From positions 62,083,597 through 62,147,596 of the forward strand of contig CM074512.1 in the NCBI GenBank assembly GCA_037379345.1: a stretch of 64,000 bases of DNA, written 5' to 3'. Source of the stretch: Perna viridis (Eukaryota). Position 1 is the stretch's first letter; every line of letters begins with the position of its first letter. The position numbers and the translations under genes were made by a program. Under the pieces are notes generated by a model. It ran no database searches. It saw only the letters and a list, made by a program, of their open reading frames with translations, and was not told the DNA's origin. Below are positions 21,332-47,510 of this stretch, piece by piece.

Positions 21332-22921
21332 ATGCTGCCTTTCGTGTCGTGGTCGATGATTATTAATTTTTTCCTCTCCCCAGCAACCGGTAAGATTGAT
21401 TTACTATAAGTTACTATCGTGAATTGATGTATGCATCAATCACAATGTATATACTAGTATATATAAAAACACCGAAGCGTAAAAAATGAGATAATTCAGA
21501 AACTTAAAAATCAAAGTACACGGCTTAAGCGTGAAAACAGGAAACAGACAATCTATATACACAATGTAGAATTAAATACAAGTCATATAAACAGTGAAGA
21601 CAATGAAACAGCTAAGAAACAACAACAAAAACAAAACAAAACAAAACGAAAATAGAGTCTTGAATGCTCAGAATTAAATTAAAAAAACACACACAACCCC
21701 CCCCCCCCCAAAAAAAAAAAAACAAAAACGAAAAAAAAACAGTGCACTGTAAAAAGAGTTAAGAATATGATAATAATTAAGAAAATAAATCCTATTCACA
21801 AAGAACTAGCCAAAAACTAGGATAGAATTCAATACGGAGGAATCATACATCATGTCTTAAAACTGGCTTTAATAAAGTGGTCAGACAGCGAAAAAAAACC
21901 CACTGTCCTCGATAAGTAAAACGAAGTTTAAAAAATCGCCTCTGTGGCATGTACTAATAATGTACATACTTTTCCGTCTCTCGCGTTTCTTGTAAACAGT
22001 AAGGACTATGACGACTTACCTTGTTAAACACTCATATTTATTATTTCAGCGGATCCCCTGTTATATCGGGACGGTTGGTCCATGAGACGACTTTTGAATT
22101 CAACAGACATTGAACCAGAGAAATCTGTATTTGAAAAGATCAAGGAGTTTTATGATGATCCGAATAATTTGGCCATGTACGGGGTTCTCCCCCTTATTGT
22201 CCTCGTGTACGGAGGGTTCTGTGTTATCTATTGCGTGTGTAAGGGATATGATGATTGTAAGAAAAAAAAGAACAAGAAGTCAAAGAAAAGACTTCTGAGA
22301 GATGATGATAACGATGAACTGCTTTCCTCAAGCTCAAACGAAAACAATAACAATATGAAAAACGACAGCGTTGACACTCGGAACAATCCGGACCGCAGCG
22401 TGACACGTGCAGCAATGGCGGGTGCTGTTGCTAAAAACAGTACACAACCAAGGAAACAAGCGACTTCTACATCAGATGTTAAACTTGCAGTTGAACGGGA
22501 GAACTCGACCCCGTTGCCGTGGGCTATCCCGGACGACGATGCTTTGTACCCGACAAAAGAAAAAGCGCCACCTCCTGCACCTGTGCAAGAACCCAAACTA
22601 AATCTAAAACCTTTACCAGTAAAACAGCCAGACAATCGTTACAAACCACCGAACCGGAAACCGCACCCTGATATGCACATGCCGCCTAGTCCGCCTCCCC
22701 CGTATGATTTCGGACGACGGGATTCCGTTGAAGAAATATCAATGAATCCGCGACGAGTGAATGCCGTCTCGAACAGGTCTAACGATCCTAGAAAGGCAAT
22801 GAACGCCATGGAACAATACGCTTTGGCAAGACAAGCTGCTCAACTGTTACGTGTGGAGAACGGGCAATCAGGACAACCGGGCATGAAAAAACCAAAGCGC
22901 CTCGTTTTCGTCGCAGAATGA
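21332..22921 (+). CDS. Two-coding-exon type-I single-pass membrane protein (21332-21389 + 22050-22921; ~309 aa) with a PPPPY motif
   Basis: Exon 1 encodes signal-peptide-like MLPFVSWSMIINFFLSPAT, ending at a phase-1 G|GTAAGA donor. Acceptor TTTCAG|C at 22050 joins in frame to the 279-aa ORF. TM segment LAMYGVLPLIVLVYGGFCVIYCVC is followed by KKKKNKK. Confidence 0.75.
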
Positions 22922-40400: not shown

Positions 40401-43400
40401 AAATAAAATTGCATTAGAAATGTTTTTTTCTCTTAATTCCAGGTTTTATTTAGCCAAACACAGTGGTAGACAATTAACATTACAGCCACAGCTAGGTAAT
40501 GCTGATTTGAATGCCACATTTTATGGTTCTAAAAAGGAAGATGATTCAAGTGGTGCCAGTAGTTCTAAAGGTCCCAGGAAACACATCATACAAGTTTCAA
40601 CGTACCAGATGTGTGTGCTGATGCTCTTCAACAATAGAGATAAATGGACGTATGAGGTTAGTTGACTGGCCTAATTCTGCTTGAGTTTTGTTGTATGAAA
40701 AGTTCTAGATAATGATATGACTCCATCTGGATAGGTTTTCAAACGGTTGAATAATTTACTAAAAGAATGAGGTATATAGTATTTTGGAAAGTATAAAGTA
40801 AATCGCCGTTTCAGAGTAACATTTCTTGTCACAGCACTTATTTGGAGTGATTTTTTTGTGCTGACACAAACAAATTGACAGCAGCAACCTTGAATTCTAG
40901 CAAGTTAATTGATTTAATTCAATTCATACCTAAAGAAAAGTTCACATAAACCAAAATTTGTTGTATTCAGTTATTAGTTAATAGCTTTATGGTGGTAAAA
41001 GTCAAAAGTGAAACTTGTCTTCATTTTAAATTAGTACTTGTAGGAATACTTTTAGTTCAGAAGTGGACTTTTTCTCATGAAAATGTCTGAAACACTCAAT
41101 GTCATGGTATTTCTATTTTATAATTCCCAGAGCATTGCTTTGACATCAACTGAGTATTGAAACCTGATGAATTTTTTTCAAGTGGTCCATATAAGTTTCA
41201 AGTTACTAATTTCCATTGTTTAAAAGCTCACTTTACTCATATGATAACTTTGAAAACACTTCACTCACAAATAGTAACTTTCAACAAAACATAGAAACAG
41301 CATGTGATAGTAGAAAAAATTTAAATAAAGGGTGCCAAAATATCAAGTTTATCTTTGATCAAAAGCTTTTATGCTGCAGACATGATTTTCTTCTACTTTA
41401 AAATGGAATTTATTTTTTTCAAATCCATATTTTTACTATTACATTGCACTTTTTTTCTTTATGGTAACTTCAGACTTTTTTGTTGGATTCATAAAATCAT
41501 GCCTGATGCTAGGGTTAAGTCAGATTATTAAACCTTACATAATAATAATTGATTCTATTGGATGAAATATAATCACGTGACAGATAAATTTTGATATTTT
41601 TTGTCTTAATCGTAGGAAAGGTTGAAAAATTCATGCCATCATTGAATAACCCTATTATTCACTGGTGAAAAACCCATCAAAAATGCAAGAGCAGGTGAAT
41701 AACCCATCAAAAATACAAGAGCAGGTCCATGACCCATCAAAAATACAAGAGCAGGTGAATAACCCTAACACATTTGAAACCATGCATTTTTTGTCAGTCC
41801 TTTGTTTGTTCGGTATAATAAAACAATTACAGCACTCTAATTTGGTGAATATCCAAAATTGTCAACCTCACTAAGGTTATTTCCCTCAGGCTAAAGTCCT
41901 CAGGGTAATAACCCTAGTTCAGGTTGACAATTTTGGATATTCACCTCCTCAGGGGGCCGTAATTGTGTAATGTTAACAAATTTCTTAATCATGGTAGAAA
42001 ATTGAAAAGAAAATATGATTACTAATCTAAGTATGTATTGGTCTAGGAAATAAAAAATGAAACAGATATACCTGAAAAAAAAAATTTGTTTGAGATGTTC
42101 AGTCAGGAATTTGATATTTTTGGTTTATGAATTTAAAAATTGTTTTTTCAGGAAATAAAAAATGAAACAGATATACCAGAAAAAGATTTGATAAGAGCTG
42201 TACAGTCACTAGCAATTGGTAAAATAACGCAAAGAGTTCTACAAAAAGAACCTAAAACTAAAGACATAGGTAAATATTAATTAGATGAAAGGTATAGATA
42301 TAGGACATCTAATAGGGATGGAGCATCAATAACGTTCTATATAGATGCTCTGAAACATGTATGACAAAGTCATTCTGTTGGAAGTGACACATTTCAGAAA
42401 TAATGTATGCAGTTAGGAAGTGATTGAACTTTTAATGCAGACATACTACATGTAGTAAGTCCCGTTGGTTGAGACTTAAGCCATATAACAACAAAGTCAA
42501 ATGTTGAGTACAAATAGCTCTGTCCCTTATATGCAAAGCCAAAAATCATATTACATACATTAGCTGTATGACATTGGTTGTTTGTGCATCACACATTGTC
42601 ATATCTAGTAAAACTATCAATAAATCAGTAAGTTGTGATTATAAGGGAATATGATTTTTAGTTTGATATATTTATTTTGTATGATGAGAGACCCCAAGTG
42701 ATAACCAGGGGCATTCCCCTCCGTCTGTCATGTATTACAAATACCACATATGAGTGCAAACCAGTTCTAACATTATTGAGTATATATGTTAGCATGAAAA
42801 CGACAATCAAATCAGGTATAGGAACAGTCAGCTGATGGTCAGTGTCACTCAAATCGTGCAATTGATTGGCTAACACTGTGTAAAGAAAGATTTTTGGGGG
42901 TTTTAGTGGTTTATATCCACAAAGTCAAAGTATCTGTTAGAAGCTACAATGTCTTTTCTTTGTATTGCACGAAATAAAGGGTATAACGGATATACGGAAA
43001 GTACTATCTTTTTCATTTTTATTGTTATTCTTTAATTAACATATTTTCTTACATGATTTTCTATGGATTACAGTTCAAAATTTTTTGTATTTTTTTCAGA
43101 ACCTAGTCATGTGTTAAGTGTTAATGATCAGTTTACTTCCAAACTGTTTAGAGTAAAGATTCAGACAGGTATTTATTTGTAATGCCAGACACAAACATCA
43201 CCTTTAAATTACAAAATGTAGATTGAATGTATTTTAGATCACTAGAGTATACTTCTACTGGCCAAAAATAGTATTGGTATGTTCACAAATAGAATACCAT
43301 GTCAGACAGTATACTTACATGTATCTAATGATTTTTAAAAATGTTCATACATTGAATGTAGTCGTATGGAAGACGTATCAAATGTTCATTGTCAACTGCA

Positions 43401-46400
43401 AGTCTTAATAATGAAAATACCACCTTTTTTTACTATCAGTGATATTTCAACGATCTGGATATTTTCATTTCATAATTAGGTAAGGACTAAGAATTTATTT
43501 TAACAATAACAATGAACAATATTTGCTTTTATGTTTCAGTTGCTGCAAACAAAGGTGAAGCAGAACCTGAAAGAAAAGAAACAAGAACTAAAGTTGATGA
43601 AGATAGAAAACATGAATATCCTTTGTTCACAACTCTCTATATACTTAATTGATAAACTATTGGTTATTTATTATAATCAATTACTGAAATTTTCACCTTG
43701 CAAATCAGTTAGGACTCCTGAAATTTCAGGGACATTTAGTTGAGTGGAGTTCTACCTTTTGTTGGATTTTGGTGTTTTATTTTGGCTAGAAACATAACCG
43801 TAATCAGAAAAATGTTAAAACATAGTATTCAGTTTTATTTTTGGACTGCAATACAAGAGCAAGATATTCATTTAAATCCTTCCAACCTTATAAAATGTAT
43901 GATGCAATTTGAAAAAAAAATTAAGGAATTTTAAATAGCGATATTTATATACAACGCAAGAAAATTGTAGTTGTACATTGGTATGGCACTGTTGTCGTCA
44001 TCCTCATCCATAGGTACTTGGTTTCTGTGCAATAACTTGTGTTTAAGATGGTTGATCTTTATAAAATTTTATAATAAAGTTCCAAACCAGAAAAGAAAGT
44101 TTGGAATTGATTTTGGAGTTATGGCCCCAACTGTTTTAGAATTGGGGGCCGAAAAGCGGCCCAAAACAAGCATTTCATGGAATTAACTGAATAACTCTAA
44201 TTAAAGCATAGGAATGTCTATGATATTGTTCCACAATATTCTATACCTCAATGGTCAGACTTTGTTTGAAAATAAAGGTCCAGAAAGAGGGCCAAAAACA
44301 TTCATTTTCCTGATGACCAGACAATAACTTGACCATTAGTGAATTAATCATTTTGAAATTGTTTTACAAGCAAGGTGCCATACCACAAAAGGGATTGATT
44401 TTTGGGGTTTTCACATAAGTCAAATAAGAGGCAAGAAACAAGTATTTTTTTCTGATTTCTTGATACCTTGCTTATTTCAGGTCTGATTTTGAATTTTTTT
44501 TATTAAATCCCTCATGAAAGTCCTTGCCTGTGTTTTTCAGAGTCTTTTGCAGTTTTCAAATTATAAGGGACCAAAAATTGTATTTTTATTTTTGATGCAA
44601 TTTTGAAGATTTTTTTTCATTAGATTCTTCATGAAAATCCCCACCTGTATATTTCAATCAGATTTCAGATATTTCTTACAGTGTTGAGTCATAAGGGGCC
44701 AAATGGGACCATGCCCCAAAAATTGGATTTTTAAAATTTTTTGTGTGATTTTGAATTTGTTTTTATTGGATTCCATATAAATCCCAGCCTCAATACAAGA
44801 GCTTTAAGAATTATGCTTACCAAATTAACATTATCACTTACTATTTCTGATATAATGAGGTACAAAAGTGATCGATAAATACACCCTGAAGCAGACCTTT
44901 ATACTTAAATTGAATTTCAAAATATTGTGCAAAATTGTGTCCAAAAGGAACTGTAAGTCACTATGTTTAGCGAGTCAAAAACTAATATTGTGTCCACACT
45001 TGCCTCAAGTGAACAGAGTTTAACTGGCTGTGGTTGTGTCATGCTGCACTTGGCAAAGCTGTTATTACAAGATAGGGATGAGGTGATACAATTTTTTTGG
45101 CATTTTGTGTCATGCCTTCGGTTATAGTTTTCCTTGAATCTTTTATCTATAAAGATGGAGTTAGAATATACATCTTGGTCTGATCTTACTATTAATGTAT
45201 GATTTCATGGTTTTGAGGAATTTCCAGAGTTAGAATAATTCACAGTAATGCATTGACTTGGAATCACGTTAGTAGCTTTAGATAGAAAATTATCAGATAG
45301 TAAGAACATTGTAAAAATGATGAAGTTGACTATAAAATAGTTTGTCTCCTTAACTCCTGTGTAAGATTGAAGCTGCAATAGTAAGAATAATGAAAGCCAG
45401 AAAGAAATTACAGCATAATGTCTTAGTAACTGAGGTAATAACTTGAAACATTGTATCACAGAAGACACTTATTTTACTGGAGAATTTAAAACATGAACAT
45501 TTTTACTGGTTTTAATCAAATCTCACATCTGTCACTCAAATCCTTTCTGAACTGTAGAAATCTGTAAACCATATGATTGTTAGACAGTCCATGTATCTGT
45601 AAAATTATGACACATTAAAGAAGAGCGGTACTGCTTTCAATACATTTCTGTGGATTTAAATAACTGTTCAGGTACAATTATTCCTTTCATAATAATGTAA
45701 TAAGGAACACCTATTTGATCAATGTAATTGAAGTATTAGGCAACCTTGTTATTTATTTAATACAGGCCAATTAGAATAATAGATAGATTTTCAACTCGGC
45801 ATGTCCCTAGAAAATACTCTGAGTTTTTAATTTTTTTTTCAAATTTACGATTTTATGGATTGTTATCTGACTGCTTCTGGTGAATAGGTTTTAGATTGTT
45901 TACTACACTTCCTTGTAACAAAAATGGCGTTTACTATTCTTCGTGTTGTTGCCAGTCAAAATACGTAGGAAAGAGGCTGATATGCAACCATAAAACATAT
46001 GGTCACATAGTAATATCTCTCTGTGTATGCTTTAAGAGTTTAATGTTTTAAAATGACAATTCCATCTGCATCTTGTAATTCTAGACAAGTCATATGACAA
46101 AAAAGAAAATAAAAAATAAAATCCTCCCACCAGCCCCACTTTTTTGTGGATACCTGGATGAAAATCTAGCTATTAAGGAGGTAGACCTAGGATAAGGGAC
46201 GTTACTCTTGAGATCAGTTATATGCTTATTTATTCAATATCACCAAAGCCTATCAAGCTTTCATTTGAAACAAGATGAAATTAGTCCAAGTTTCTTTGAT
46301 ACTTACATGAGATTGATGTAAAATGCTGAATACAAATGTTCCAATGATTTGTAAGAGTTGTGTCCCTTACCCAAGGTCTACCTCCTTAAATTAGTTAGCC

Positions 46401-46931
46401 ATACTAAGCAACAAATTGAGAGTGTATATTTTGATGATTTTCAGTGTACTGAACAGTTAAAAGCCAGATTCCTGCCTAGTCCTGTGGTAATTAAGAAGAG
46501 AATTGAGGGTTTGATAGAAAGGGAATATTTAGCTAGAACACCAGAAGATAGGTTAGTTGAATAAATAGGATTATAATTTAGAGGGTGAATATTGAAAATG
46601 TTACTAATGAGTGCTGATATTAGTTAAATCATGTGCTTTCTCCATCAGCACACATGATCATATTATTTTTTATTTCCATTCATGACATAAATATTTATAA
46701 GTGTAGTACTTATATCTTGTAATTGATTATTTCCAATAATGAATTATCAATTTCAAAATTAAAAAAGAAATCACCACTATTGCATATTTATTTCCATCAT
46801 AGGTATTGGAAAATTTTGAACCTCTCATAAGGTAAAAAAAACCTGATTCATGGATCACATGGGGTAGAAAAATGTTTAATAGTTTTCTGTTTCTGTCTAT
46901 TTCCAGGAAAGTGTATACATATGTAGCATGA
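28398..46931 (+). CDS. CUL3: Cullin-3, complete CDS in 20 exons (2280 nt, 759 aa)
   Basis: Exons join in frame from [30 protein letters not shown]... to ...[19 protein letters not shown]. Contains [33 protein letters not shown] and [13 protein letters not shown] (neddylation site). Confidence 0.97.
28569..28587 (+). promoter_or_regulatory. Adjacent YY1-like (AAAATGGCGG) and ETS/GABP-like (CGGAAGTG) motifs at the start of CUL3 intron 1
   Basis: Motif match only. Typical of housekeeping promoter-proximal regions. Confidence 0.4.
29626..29823 (+). CDS. CUL3: CUL3 coding exon 2 (GC donor)
   Basis: TTTTAG|MTMDEKY...DHLVEK|GCAAGA; 198 nt. Confidence 0.92.
30109..30222 (+). CDS. CUL3: CUL3 coding exon 3
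   Basis: [15 protein letters not shown]...RDILMYM; AG/GT boundaries. Confidence 0.95.
30568..31787. mobile_element. Non-autonomous Tc1/mariner-type DNA element with TA TSD, carrying a nested Penelope-like fragment
   Basis: TA|CCGTATTTTCTAGACTACAAGTCGA ... TCAACTTATTGTCCGGAAAATACGG|TA, with sub-terminal CGACTTAT repeats. Confidence 0.8.
31118..31423 (-). mobile_element. Penelope-like element 3' fragment (copy F)
   Basis: AGAGTAATCAAGGGAA terminus and CCAGGTGCACCGGTAG core. Confidence 0.8.
32721..32881 (+). CDS. CUL3: CUL3 coding exon 4
   Basis: [18 protein letters not shown]...ERRGEVVD; AG/GT boundaries. Confidence 0.95.
33177..33291 (+). CDS. CUL3: CUL3 coding exon 5
   Basis: [14 protein letters not shown]...[18 protein letters not shown]. 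Confidence 0.95.
33684..33815 (+). CDS. CUL3: CUL3 coding exon 6
   Basis: [26 protein letters not shown]...PIVR. Confidence 0.95.
34272..34806. mobile_element. MITE-like element with inverted sub-terminal GGACAAAAGCCCC repeats
   Basis: Four (G/A)A(C/T)A(A/T)AAGCCCC units at the left end and the reverse-complement GGGCTTTT(G/A)TC units at the right end. Confidence 0.6.
34878..35055. mobile_element. Tc1/mariner-type MITE
   Basis: TA|CTGTAAACATA ... TACGTTTACAG|TA. Confidence 0.6.
35149..35196 (+). CDS. CUL3: CUL3 coding exon 7 (48 nt)
   Basis: [16 protein letters not shown]. Confidence 0.93.
35244..35432. mobile_element. MITE with AG(A/G)GCTATTCC(A/T)GAA TIRs
   Basis: About 20-bp imperfect inverted ends, plus an internal inverted pair GGTTGGGAGGCAC / GTGCCTCCCAACC. 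Confidence 0.6.
35829..35877 (+). CDS. CUL3: CUL3 coding exon 8 (49 nt)
   Basis: [16 protein letters not shown]. Confidence 0.93.
36297..36445 (+). CDS. CUL3: CUL3 coding exon 9
   Basis: [12 protein letters not shown]...[10 protein letters not shown]...TYIQ. Confidence 0.95.
37129..37305 (+). CDS. CUL3: CUL3 coding exon 10
   Basis: [13 protein letters not shown]...[19 protein letters not shown]. Confidence 0.95.
37669..37839 (+). CDS. CUL3: CUL3 coding exon 11
   Basis: [12 protein letters not shown]...[10 protein letters not shown]; 171 nt. Confidence 0.95.
38263..38680. mobile_element. Non-autonomous DNA element with TAGGTTCTCAGGC TIRs (TAG termini, possibly Academ-like)
   Basis: TAGGTTCTCAGGC ... 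GCCTGAGAACCTA are perfect 13-bp inverted ends. Confidence 0.6.
39195..39302 (+). CDS. CUL3: CUL3 coding exon 12
   Basis: [18 protein letters not shown]... Confidence 0.95.
39981..40105 (+). CDS. CUL3: CUL3 coding exon 13
   Basis: [21 protein letters not shown]...AFENFR. Confidence 0.92.
40443..40656 (+). CDS. CUL3: CUL3 coding exon 14
   Basis: [18 protein letters not shown]...[19 protein letters not shown]. Confidence 0.95.
41664..41765. repeat. 30-bp tandem repeat x3.4
   Basis: GGTGAATAACCCATCAAAAATACAAGAGCA units. Confidence 0.85.
42152..42269 (+). CDS. CUL3: CUL3 coding exon 15
   Basis: [24 protein letters not shown]...KEPKTKDI. Confidence 0.95.
43100..43168 (+). CDS. CUL3: CUL3 coding exon 16
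   Basis: [23 protein letters not shown]. Confidence 0.95.
43540..43615 (+). CDS. CUL3: CUL3 coding exon 17 (ends at the U12 donor)
   Basis: [25 protein letters not shown]+GA|ATATCCTTT. Confidence 0.93.
43616..45364 (+). other. CUL3: U12-type (minor spliceosome) intron with AT-AA termini
   Basis: 5'ss ATATCCTTT; branch site TCCTTAAC at 45347-45354; no polypyrimidine tract; the reading frame requires the 3'ss at ...GTGTAA|G. Confidence 0.85.
43942..45068 (+). mobile_element. Degenerate Helentron/HINE-like element with internal tandem units, inside the U12 intron
   Basis: TTTATATACAACGCA..TGTAGTTGTAC hairpin, GTC/ATC microsatellite remnant, and repeated CAATAACTT...TTGATTTTGG...GG(G/A)CCAAAA units. 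Related relics lie at about 50690-51265, 53800-54005 and 55040-55520. Confidence 0.5.
45365..45434 (+). CDS. CUL3: CUL3 coding exon 18 (contains the neddylated lysine)
   Basis: G+[23 protein letters not shown]|GTAATA. Confidence 0.92.
46445..46551 (+). CDS. CUL3: CUL3 coding exon 19
   Basis: [35 protein letters not shown]. Confidence 0.95.
46907..46931 (+). CDS. CUL3: CUL3 coding exon 20 (terminal)
   Basis: TTCCAG|G AAA GTG TAT ACA TAT GTA GCA TGA. Confidence 0.93.
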
Positions 46932-47510
46932 ATGGAAACTTTTGAAGCCGACTGTTTTAGTATGGTAGTCTACTCATTTGTATATGGACCAGTCACGGTG
47001 TTTGGCTGTGTCCCTGCAATACAAATGATCTGCATTCAAACATTGAAGAACAGCTAGCAGCATTTAAGCTTGAAAGATGAGATCTATAGAAACTTATTTG
47101 AAGCCTTGACTCCAAATCGCATCAATATTTTTACAGTAAACTTGCAGAACTTCTTATTTATTTTAGTCGAAAAAAGACTGTCCACTTCAATGTATATCTA
47201 TGCAGTTACTGCAGAATTTATTTGTTATATTTTATTTGTTGAATGAATGATTTTAGGTCTGCTTGAGGAAATGTGAATCGTAGTATTTTCTGATGTTTGT
47301 TGATGTGTATGTGAATGATAGAGTTATCAAGTATTTTTAAGTTCAAATTGAACTGCTCATTTCAGCTTTGTAGAGTAAACTTCAGCTCATAATGACAGGG
47401 AATTGATTAGTTAATTTAGGGGATAAAGTTGGTGTTCTTATGATTGAATGCCTATTACATTATTAACTTCCTTAGGTAGTTAATTGGACATTTGGGAGAT
47501 ATATATATAG

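What the first reader, a model, noticed from the sequence alone, without database searches (positions are those of the whole stretch)
43616..45364. Rare AT-AA minor-spliceosome intron gating the CUL3 neddylation exon, with a competing out-of-frame AG one base away
Seen: exon 17 ends CAT GA, followed by ATATCCTTT, a perfect U12 donor. A U12 branch site TCCTTAAC (45347-45354) lies 10 nt before ...GTGTAA|G ATT GAA GCT. Only a junction after AA (45363-45364) restores the conserved [14 protein letters not shown]. There is no AC at the junction, and using the AG at 45364-45365 shifts the frame. Known: U12 introns are mostly GT-AG or AT-AC, AT-AA is a rare tolerated variant, and U12 3'ss choice is set largely by distance from the branch point. 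From memory, human CUL3 has one uninterrupted 146-nt exon here; the two flanking exons sum to 76+70=146. Inference: slow or imprecise splicing of this intron could tune the amount of neddylatable CUL3, because retention or +1 slippage removes the IMK neddylation site. Standard annotation would probably mis-model this junction.
Basis: partly seen in the sequence, partly recalled or inferred. Interest (0 to 1): 0.75.

Follow-up and report, generated by a model that had tools for sequence, protein, structure and literature searches.

The report
Minor-spliceosome AT-AA intron in bivalve CUL3
A bivalve cullin-3 gene carries an ancient intron of the rare minor-spliceosome class whose last base has changed from the usual C to A; it looks efficiently spliced, so it is a real but fairly ordinary member of a known rare intron subtype.

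Summary
Exon C (43540-43615) ends CATGA and is followed by ATATCCTTT. TCCTTAAC lies at 45347-45354, 10 nt before the intron end GTGTAA (45364). Only a 43615^45365 junction keeps the frame.

An independent DNA run matches the window across 45008-45927 except at four listed places, none near the acceptor, so AA is not an assembly error. Stranded RNA covers both exons and almost none of the unique intron flanks.

Read laying did not list the splice joint itself. The ends of three transcript contigs fit a k=31 graph that branches exactly after 43615 and carries a 70-nt exon D. This supports AA use, not the AG one base on.

Thirty-one metagenome contigs hold an intron at the same acceptor position: 18 end AC and 13 end AG, none AA. 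The donor was seen in 29: 16 ATATCCT (all with AC), 13 GTATCCT (all with AG). The closest ones have the window's spacing, so a single terminal C-to-A change explains it. The genome encodes U11, U12 and U6atac.

AT-AA is reported as the commonest non-canonical minor-intron type (PMC10639083). The "gating of neddylation" idea has no support in the data seen. The scan had already noted other U12 introns in this genome (SERCA, XPG).

The parts
43540..43615 (+). CUL3 exon C (76 nt); ends with the first two bases (GA) of the Glu codon split by the intron
   Evidence: AG at 43538-39 and the translation [27 protein letters not shown] depth lies on the first_mate_on- strand only.
43616..43624 (+). U12-type 5' splice site ATATCCTTT (A-type)
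   Evidence: The same codon position carries ATATCCT (16 loci) or GTATCCT (13 loci) in 29 of 31 orthologous loci. 30 of 35 ORF hits read DRKH|EYP. It is complementary to the genome's own U6atac (GAAAGGA) and U11 (AAAGG).
43616..45364 (+). Minor-spliceosome intron, 1749 nt, phase 2, termini AT-AA
   Evidence: Frame argument. Contig arithmetic in X16 (with exon boundaries). Orthology.
44041..45139 (.). High-copy repeat (transposon-like) filling of the intron interior
   Evidence: k-mer depth of thousands to tens of thousands in DNA run X5, and many repeat-type joints.
45347..45354 (+). U12 branch-site motif TCCTTAAC; presumed branch A at 45353 (or 45352)
   Evidence: The distance from the branch A to the last intron base is 11 nt; orthologues span 9-14. 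With one A bulged it pairs with AGTAAGGA of the genome's U12 snRNA.
45363..45364 (+). Non-canonical 3' terminal dinucleotide AA (orthologues: AC or AG)
   Evidence: The independent DNA contig X5 record 14 (45008-45927) has all 4 of its differences elsewhere. 0 of 31 orthologous loci have AA.
45364..45365 (+). Overlapping AG made by the same terminal A plus the first exon base G; using it shifts the frame
   Evidence: E-LKLQ-stop. No evidence of use; contig ends in X16 argue against it as the main form.
45365..45434 (+). CUL3 exon D (70 nt), start of the cullin neddylation domain; Lys codon of the IMK motif at 45393-45395
   Evidence: The PF10557 match in the own genome at C2:62128959-62129042 equals window 45363-45446. 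That this Lys is the NEDD8 acceptor is recalled knowledge, not tested here.
46445..46551 (+). CUL3 exon E (next exon, ordinary GT-AG introns on both sides)
   Evidence: X16 transcript contig record 8 covers 46443-46552. PF10557 match.

Best explanation
This is a genuine intron of the CUL3 gene of a bivalve (mytilid-like), removed by the minor spliceosome and spliced constitutively. U11 and U6atac recognise the donor /ATATCCTTT. U12 pairs with TCCTTA(A)CT and bulges the branch adenosine. The second step joins 43615 to 45365, cutting after the A that lies 11 nt downstream of the branch point, so the intron is AT-AA.

The intron is old. The same phase-2 site in the Glu codon before [10 protein letters not shown] carries an AT-AC or GT-AG U12 intron in many other invertebrates. 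The AA end arose by one C-to-A substitution of the last intron base. Because the first exon base is G, that substitution also created the neighbouring AG.

The AA end is tolerated, as in other AT-AA minor introns. It is not a special regulatory device.

Shown: the sequence anatomy, the DNA correctness, expression of both exons, orthology, and the presence of the snRNA genes. Inferred: the exact junction in RNA (indirect), dependence on the minor spliceosome, and the direction of the C-to-A change.
For: Anatomy and frame.

DNA: X5 contig record 14 (920 nt, a study other than that of the best holder) covers 45008-45927. Its 2 other letters and 2 indels are all listed elsewhere (45466, 45818, 45092, 45823).

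RNA, X21/X22:
- Strand-specific depth in exon-containing bins: 43413-43569 3.2/4.4, 43570-43726 4.5/5.7, 45297-45453 9.5/5.8, 46396-46552 15/11.
- Depth in unique intron bins: 43727-43883 0/0.85 and 45140-45296 0/1.38.

X16 contigs (with exon boundaries):
- Record 1 (2252 nt) ends by arithmetic at 43615.
- The unspliced record 2 starts at 43586, which is 43616 minus 30.
- Record 8 (884 nt, depth 39.4) has 98 nt upstream of 46443. That equals 68 nt of exon D plus 30 nt (43586-43615).
- All three numbers fit a k=31 graph that branches right after 43615 and carries a 70-nt exon D.

Orthologues:
- 31 of 31 metagenome loci found with a pattern that left the terminal bases free end in AC (18) or AG (13).
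- 29 of 31 show the donor at the same codon: 16 ATATCCT, all paired with AC, and 13 GTATCCT, all paired with AG.
- L002 and L031 are closest in peptide and have the same 10-nt spacing, ending AC.
- 30 of 35 ORF hits read DRKH|EYP.
- Read-through models show T (AC) in Dreissena, Mactra and an unnamed JGI contig, and R (most likely AG) in Acropora before IEAAIV.

Machinery: U12, U6atac and U11 genes, 2 each and all above the Rfam cut-offs, with the complementary boxes.

Literature: AT-AA is reported as the commonest non-canonical minor terminus in animals and plants (PMC10639083, passages). MSH3 is AT-AA in human and AT-AC in mouse (PMC1557818, Table 3).
Against: - The splice joint 43615^45365 was not displayed by read laying. 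Only 15 of 292 joints were listed, all repeat-related, so there is no direct read count for AA versus AG+1 versus retention.
- The contig arithmetic rests on pieces of records 1 and 8 that were not shown, and on Logan contigs overlapping by k-1 = 30.
- Contigs drop rare variants, so a minor +1 isoform, especially one removed by NMD, cannot be excluded.
- The metagenome pattern required a CCTTRAY box 4-16 nt upstream. It therefore cannot show how many species lack the intron, and it would miss orthologues with a degenerate branch site.
- The organisms behind L001-L031 are unnamed, and many loci are near-duplicates (16 distinct types at 95% identity).
- No other mytilid was seen, so it is unknown whether AA is fixed or when it arose.
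Confidence: 0.85

Rival explanations
1. Regulatory gate. The weak AA end and the overlapping AG make splicing slow or imprecise. Retention or +1 use, followed by a premature stop and NMD, would then tune how much neddylatable CUL3 is made.
For: - The AG at 45364-65 lies 12 nt from the branch A, within the 9-14 nt range used by orthologues.
- Its use gives a stop after 4 codons.
- A-type (AT-AN) minor introns have higher basal retention in human cells (PMC8280824, passages).
- X16 holds a 350-nt unspliced contig across the donor at depth 4.4, against 27-39 for the spliced contigs.
Against: - In raw stranded RNA (X21, X22) the unique intron bins have depth 0/0.85 and 0/1.38, about 0-2 reads, against roughly 15-23 estimated on exon C.
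- X16 also has a low-depth unspliced contig (3.2) in the neighbouring U2 intron, so this is ordinary pre-mRNA background.
- Record 2 runs unbroken from 43586. No second branch at 43617/43618 is visible, as a +1 product would create (weak, because contigs drop rare forms).
- The AG is an automatic by-product of C-to-A in front of a G, not evidence of design.
- 0 of 31 orthologues have such an arrangement.
Confidence: 0.08
2. Other boundaries. The intron is really 43617-45365 (TA-AG). This also encodes Glu (GAA instead of GAG) and would use the AG.
For: Both readings give the same protein, so conservation alone cannot separate them (my reading).
Against: - The cut would lie one base inside the U12 donor, which all 29 orthologous donors place at /RTATCC.
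- The X16 contig ends (record 1 ending at 43615, record 2 starting at 43586) put the divergence of spliced and unspliced RNA after 43615, not after 43616.
- Record 8 would need a 31-nt overlap instead of 30.
Confidence: 0.04
3. Assembly or sequencing error: the true last base is C and the intron is ordinary AT-AC.
For: All close orthologues end AC with the same spacing.
Against: An independent DNA run from another study (X5, record 14, depth 70) is identical over 45008-45927 except at four listed places away from the acceptor.
Confidence: 0.02

Closest known systems
AT-AA subtype of U12-type (minor) introns, e.g. human/mouse RASGRP4, and human MSH3 (AT-AA) versus mouse Msh3 (AT-AC)
   Same: Strong ATATCCTT donor, TCCTTAAC-like branch site close to the 3' end, and a last base A instead of C. 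The same intron is AC in related species, as with MSH3 (PMC1557818, Tables 2-3). AT-AA is reported as the commonest non-canonical minor terminus (PMC10639083).
   Different: It sits in CUL3 of a bivalve. My searches of the held library found no description of a CUL3 minor intron. Here the terminal A is followed by G, so an out-of-frame AG overlaps the site.
A-type (AT-AN) minor introns that depend on CENATAC
   Same: It has AT-AN termini, the class defined in PMC8280824 (passages).
   Different: Neither elevated retention nor dependence on a CENATAC orthologue was shown here. I did not look for a CENATAC gene.
Minor introns of other cullin genes (mammalian CUL4B AT-AG/AT-AT; mouse Cul4a)
   Same: A cullin gene with a minor intron and, for CUL4B, a non-canonical 3' end (PMC1557818 Table 3; PMC12956336 passages).
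   Different: No evidence that the positions are homologous. In this genome the CUL4-like and CUL2-like genes have no intron at this site. The CUL1-like and CUL5-like genes have a U2-type phase-0 intron 7 nt further on.
AT-AC intron of SERCA in the same genome (earlier finding s1-755828)
   Same: An ancient minor intron, conserved in other invertebrates and mis-annotated in public records, according to that note.
   Different: That one has canonical AC. I did not re-test it.

Membership tests
U12-type (minor-spliceosome) intron | 5' splice site matching /RTATCCTT | tested here: met
   ATATCCTTT at 43616-43624, directly after the homology-defined exon end.
U12-type (minor-spliceosome) intron | Branch-site box TCCTTRAY close to the 3' end (about 10-15 nt; the range is recalled), with no polypyrimidine tract | tested here: met
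   TCCTTAAC at 45347-45354, with the branch A 11 nt from the intron end. Orthologues span 9-14 nt. By eye, the 30 nt upstream show no pyrimidine run.
U12-type (minor-spliceosome) intron | The orthologous intron is U12-type in other species | tested here: met
   29 of 31 metagenome loci show both a U12 donor and a branch box at the same codon. The other 2 lack upstream sequence. 30 of 35 ORFs read DRKH|EYP.
U12-type (minor-spliceosome) intron | The host genome has minor-spliceosome snRNAs | tested here: met
   U12 at 124.5 and 121.7 bits, U6atac at 96.5 and 96.1 bits, U11 at 90.6 and 76.2 bits, all over the cut-offs. The complementary boxes were read. U4atac was not searched.
U12-type (minor-spliceosome) intron | Removal depends on U11/U12/U4atac/U6atac | not testable with these tools
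   Needs snRNA knock-down or a minigene assay.
AT-AA subtype | First two bases AT and last two bases AA in genomic DNA | tested here: met
   An independent DNA contig agrees at the acceptor.
AT-AA subtype | RNA junction exactly at these bases | tested here: inconclusive
   The joint was not listed by read laying (15 of 292 shown). Three contig coordinates in X16 agree with 43615^45365, but this is indirect.
Regulated unproductive splicing or detained intron | Substantial intron retention or an out-of-frame alternative junction in RNA | tested here: not met
   Unique intron bins have depth 0-1.4, against about 15-23 on exon C, in two runs. There is a comparable low-depth unspliced contig in the neighbouring U2 intron. 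Rare or NMD-cleared forms are not excluded.

The most novel reading that the evidence does not exclude
A single C-to-A change put two candidate 3' cuts one base apart: AA|G in frame and AG|A out of frame. Both lie at a permitted distance from the U12 branch point. The minor spliceosome's choice between them, or slow second-step chemistry at the A-A pair, would then set the ratio of functional CUL3 mRNA to an NMD substrate. That would make cullin-3 output in this bivalve sensitive to minor-spliceosome activity.
Probability: 0.08. Interest if true: 0.55.

Novelty: new member of a known kind. Interest (0 to 1): 0.3.

Why it matters
It adds a well-supported invertebrate example of the AT-AA minor-intron subtype, with its AT-AC and GT-AG orthologues alongside. 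It shows that CUL3 carries an ancient U12 intron at the start of the neddylation domain in molluscs and coral-like hosts.

The practical value is for annotation. Six public protein entries from five species are truncated at this intron. Gene models of CUL3 in these groups lose the last ~58-80 residues or are split in two.

The natural AA|G versus AG|A arrangement is a small but clean test case for how the minor spliceosome picks its 3' site. There is no evidence for a regulatory role.

Tried and rejected
- Joints: read laying was meant to count junctions. Its joint table listed only the 15 best-supported of 292 joints, all from repeats inside the introns, so the decisive counts were not obtained. 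The tool has one call.
Their 3' termini are inferred only from the residue before IEAAIV in read-through models (T = AC, K = AA, R = most likely AG).
- Representative search: the search with the exon-2 peptide gave 963 hits, mostly short fragments. The three full-length proteins I fetched were too divergent to be useful and were not pursued.
- Acceptor ORF census: one search returned 1 candidate only.
- Pseudogene or retrocopy: rejected. The PF10557 search of the own genome gave 8 matches. Only the window's two are CUL3-like, and no uninterrupted CUL3 copy exists.
- Hosted RNA: no Rfam family reaches its gathering score in 42000-47000.
- Alternative GT-AG pair: none restores the conserved RKHE-IEAAIV, by inspection.
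- Joined model: the joined (spliced) CUL3 model was never built or searched. Searches were made exon by exon or with stored database proteins.
- Human exon: the remembered human exon structure was not checked, and no contig was taken for human.
- Supplements: supplementary tables were closed (for example Table S1 of PMC10639083 and the datasets of PMC8280824). They may list CUL3 minor introns or AT-AA cases in molluscs, so 'not described' rests only on full-text searches.
- PMC1370826 (Dietrich 2005) is not held. What I say about tolerance of 3' bases comes from papers that cite it and from recall.
Full report
**Observation.** The window carries a cullin-3 gene on the + strand, from about 28.4 kb to beyond 46.5 kb (ORF list). 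Exon C is 43540-43615 (76 nt). It translates [24 protein letters not shown] and ends with GA. The next nine bases are ATATCCTTT (43616-43624). Exon D is 45365-45434 (70 nt): G followed by [23 protein letters not shown], then a GTAATA donor. TCCTTAAC lies at 45347-45354, and ten bases (tcctgtgtaa) separate it from the exon. There is no AC at the acceptor. Starting the exon one base later, after the AG at 45364-65, gives E-LKLQ-stop. RTATCCTTT (2 matches, 1.99 expected) and TCCTTAAC (4 matches, 2.49 expected) are not rare in the window. Their exact placement is what matters.

**DNA.** The look-up of sequencing runs listed 24 runs. I laid window 42000-46700 on two raw stranded RNA runs (X21, X22), one set of probable RNA contigs (X16) and one set of DNA contigs from a different study (X5). 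X5 record 14 is 920 nt at depth 70 and covers 45008-45927 with 2 other letters and 2 indels. All four are listed elsewhere (45466, 45818, 45092, 45823). The branch box, the AA and the following G are therefore confirmed in independent DNA. The 'assembly error' refutation does not apply.

**RNA depth.** Depth lies on first_mate_on- only, so the RNA is from the + strand, and it follows the exons. For X21/X22 the bins read:

| Bin | Content | X21 | X22 |
|---|---|---|---|
| 42157-42313 | exon | 9.2 | 11.6 |
| 43099-43255 | exon | 4.7 | 8.2 |
| 43413-43569 | exon C, part | 3.2 | 4.4 |
| 43570-43726 | exon C, part | 4.5 | 5.7 |
| 45297-45453 | exon D | 9.5 | 5.8 |
| 46396-46552 | exon E | 15 | 11 |
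| 43727-43883 | unique flank of this intron | 0 | 0.85 |
| 45140-45296 | unique flank of this intron | 0 | 1.38 |
| 43256-43412 | neighbouring intron | 0 | 0 |
| 45454-45610 | neighbouring intron | 0 | 0 |

Scaled to the exonic share of the bins, exon C is at about 15-23 (my rough scaling). Retention is therefore at most a few per cent and rests on one or two reads.

**The junction, indirectly.** The joint table showed only the 15 best-supported of 292 joints, all from repeats, so the junction itself was not displayed. The X16 contigs still speak indirectly. The exon boundaries are A 42152-42269, B 43100-43168, C 43540-43615, D 45365-45434 and E from 46445.
- Record 1 (2252 nt) has 42150-42267 at its positions 148-265. 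Counting on, its position 1 falls on 43615.
- Record 2, an unspliced 350-nt contig of depth 4.4, starts at 43586. That is 30 bases before 43616.
- Record 8 (884 nt, depth 39.4) has 46443-46552 at positions 786-677. That leaves 98 bases: 68 more of exon D plus 30, which is 43586-43615.

Three numbers thus fit a 31-mer graph that forks exactly after 43615 into an unspliced branch and a spliced branch with a 70-nt exon D. The +1 AG product would begin AT like the intron and would fork after 43617. The TA-AG reading would fork after 43616. This is inference from coordinates, not a displayed read. X16 also has a low-depth unspliced contig (record 3, depth 3.2) in the next, ordinary intron, so the 4.4-deep contig is not a special sign of retention.

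**Orthologues, DNA.** I therefore scanned the metagenome collection with a pattern made of a CCTTRAY box, 4-16 free bases, and the degenerate start of exon D. It found 31 loci, all encoding [10 protein letters not shown]-type exons.
- The last two intron bases were free in the pattern. They are AC in 18 loci, AG in 13 and AA in none.
- A donor at the same split codon was found in 29 of 31 loci. L013 and L028 have only 278 and 255 nt upstream.
- There are 16 ATATCCT donors, all paired with AC, and 13 GTATCCT donors, all paired with AG.
- Intron lengths run from 59 to 887 nt.
- At 95% identity the loci fall into 16 types, 10 ending AC and 6 ending AG.
- L002 and L031 have exon C peptides one residue away from the window's. 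They show ccttaac plus 10 bases ending AC, the same spacing as the window.

A single C-to-A change of the last base therefore explains the AA. Because exon D starts with G, the same change creates the overlapping AG.

**Orthologues, protein.**
- With the window ORF over exon C as the query, 30 of 35 hits (one is the window's own ORF) read DRKH|EYP, the read-through of GA|RTATCC. Four have DRKHE-IEAAIV or DRKHE-VEAAVV uninterrupted, and one lacks the motif.
- With the ORF over exon E, 201 proteins passed E <= 0.001 and the best 120 were listed. Of those 120, 14 contain the exon D motif. Eleven are preceded by DRKHE. Three are read-through models: Dreissena (..ALTVAT), an unnamed JGI contig (..SLTFIT) and Acropora (..SLTKYR).
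- The codon before Ile holds the last two intron bases, so T means AC and R most likely means AG.
- A Mactra entry reads ..SLTLCT, again AC.
- Six NCBI entries from five species are truncated models that start in or just after this intron: VDI39934.1 and VDI39935.1 (Mytilus galloprovincialis), KAH3808320.1, KAH9488997.1, KAK2573585.1 and KAL4220044.1. The Mytilus entries are identical to the window's exons D-E, so the window is from a mytilid-like bivalve.

**Machinery and paralogues.** The own genome (723 Mb, 46 contigs) has two copies each of U12, U6atac and U11, all over the Rfam cut-offs. U12 contains AGTAAGGAA, which pairs with TCCTTA(A)CT with one A bulged. U6atac contains GAAAGGAGA and U11 contains AAAAGGG, which pair with the CCTTT of the donor. 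A PF10557 search found 8 matches. The CUL4-like and CUL2-like genes have no intron at this site. The CUL1-like and CUL5-like genes have a U2-type phase-0 intron 7 nt further on. There is no second CUL3 copy and no retrocopy.

**Literature.**
- Sheth et al. 2006 (PMC1557818, tables seen in passages) count AT-AA introns: 3 in human, 4 in mouse and 1 in Arabidopsis. They list MSH3 as AT-AA in human and AT-AC in mouse, and CUL4B as AT-AG/AT-AT.
- Larue and Roy 2023 (PMC10639083, passages) state that AT-AA is the commonest non-canonical minor terminus in animals and plants. Non-canonical termini make up about 3.8% of conserved animal minor introns.
- de Wolf et al. 2021 (PMC8280824, passages) define A-type (AT-AN) minor introns, which have higher basal retention and depend on CENATAC.
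- Searches for a CUL3 minor intron (passages) returned only LZTR1 as a CUL3 adaptor, plus Cul4a and CUL4B.
- Supplements were closed and may hold relevant lists.

**Verdict.** This is a real, ancient U12 intron whose terminal C became A. It is a new example of a known subtype, probably spliced constitutively. The proposed tuning of neddylatable CUL3 has no support in the data seen. It remains possible only for rare or NMD-cleared products.

**Limits.**
- There are no direct junction counts.
- No DNA from named relatives was available.
- The hosts of the 31 loci are unnamed.
- The joined CUL3 model was not searched, by rule.
- The human exon structure was not checked.
- Earlier notes of this scan (s1-755828, s1-783082) report other U12 introns in the same genome. 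I did not re-test them.

Noticed in passing
window 46082-46395: A very high-copy repeat inside the intron between exons D and E. RNA depth is about 1100-1430 per strand in X21/X22, DNA k-mer depth is up to 2.2 million, and there are 'opposite strands' joints near 46231/46361 that suggest an inverted-repeat (MITE-like) element. No Rfam family matches.
   Followed up: partly
window 44041-45139: The interior of the U12 intron is filled with high-copy repeats. DNA k-mer depth is in the thousands to tens of thousands, with many internal deletion-type joints between copies.
   Followed up: no
L033 (G000:C7:1848179-1848301) and L032 (G000:C6:42883558-42883731): The CUL1-like and CUL5-like paralogues share a U2-type phase-0 intron directly before (A/E)AIV. 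That is 7 nt downstream of the CUL3 U12 site. The CUL4-like (L034) and CUL2-like (L037) genes have no intron there.
   Followed up: partly
public proteins P0005, P0006, P0019, P0084, P0086, P0307: Six NCBI entries from five species (Mytilus galloprovincialis x2, Dreissena polymorpha, Bulinus truncatus, Acropora cervicornis, Mactra antiquata) are 58-113 aa 'cullin 3' fragments. They begin inside or just after this intron, so the gene models are broken at the U12 intron.
   Followed up: partly
L008, L009, L010, L014, L016, L021, L029: Very short U12 introns (59-78 nt) at the same site in unnamed hosts. In L008, L009, L010, L016, L021 and L029 the split codon is CA|G (Gln) instead of GA|G.
   Followed up: no
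G000:C6:5910436-5910586, C6:31340078-31340228, C9:34024561-34024681, C3:36096035-36096157, C2:33981092-33981218, C9:9002921-9003046: Two gene copies each of the U12, U6atac and U11 snRNAs.
   Followed up: partly
window 22082-22921: An uninterrupted 279-aa ORF on the + strand upstream of CUL3. It is Pro/Ser/Asn-rich and has a hydrophobic segment near the N-terminus. It was not examined.
   Followed up: no
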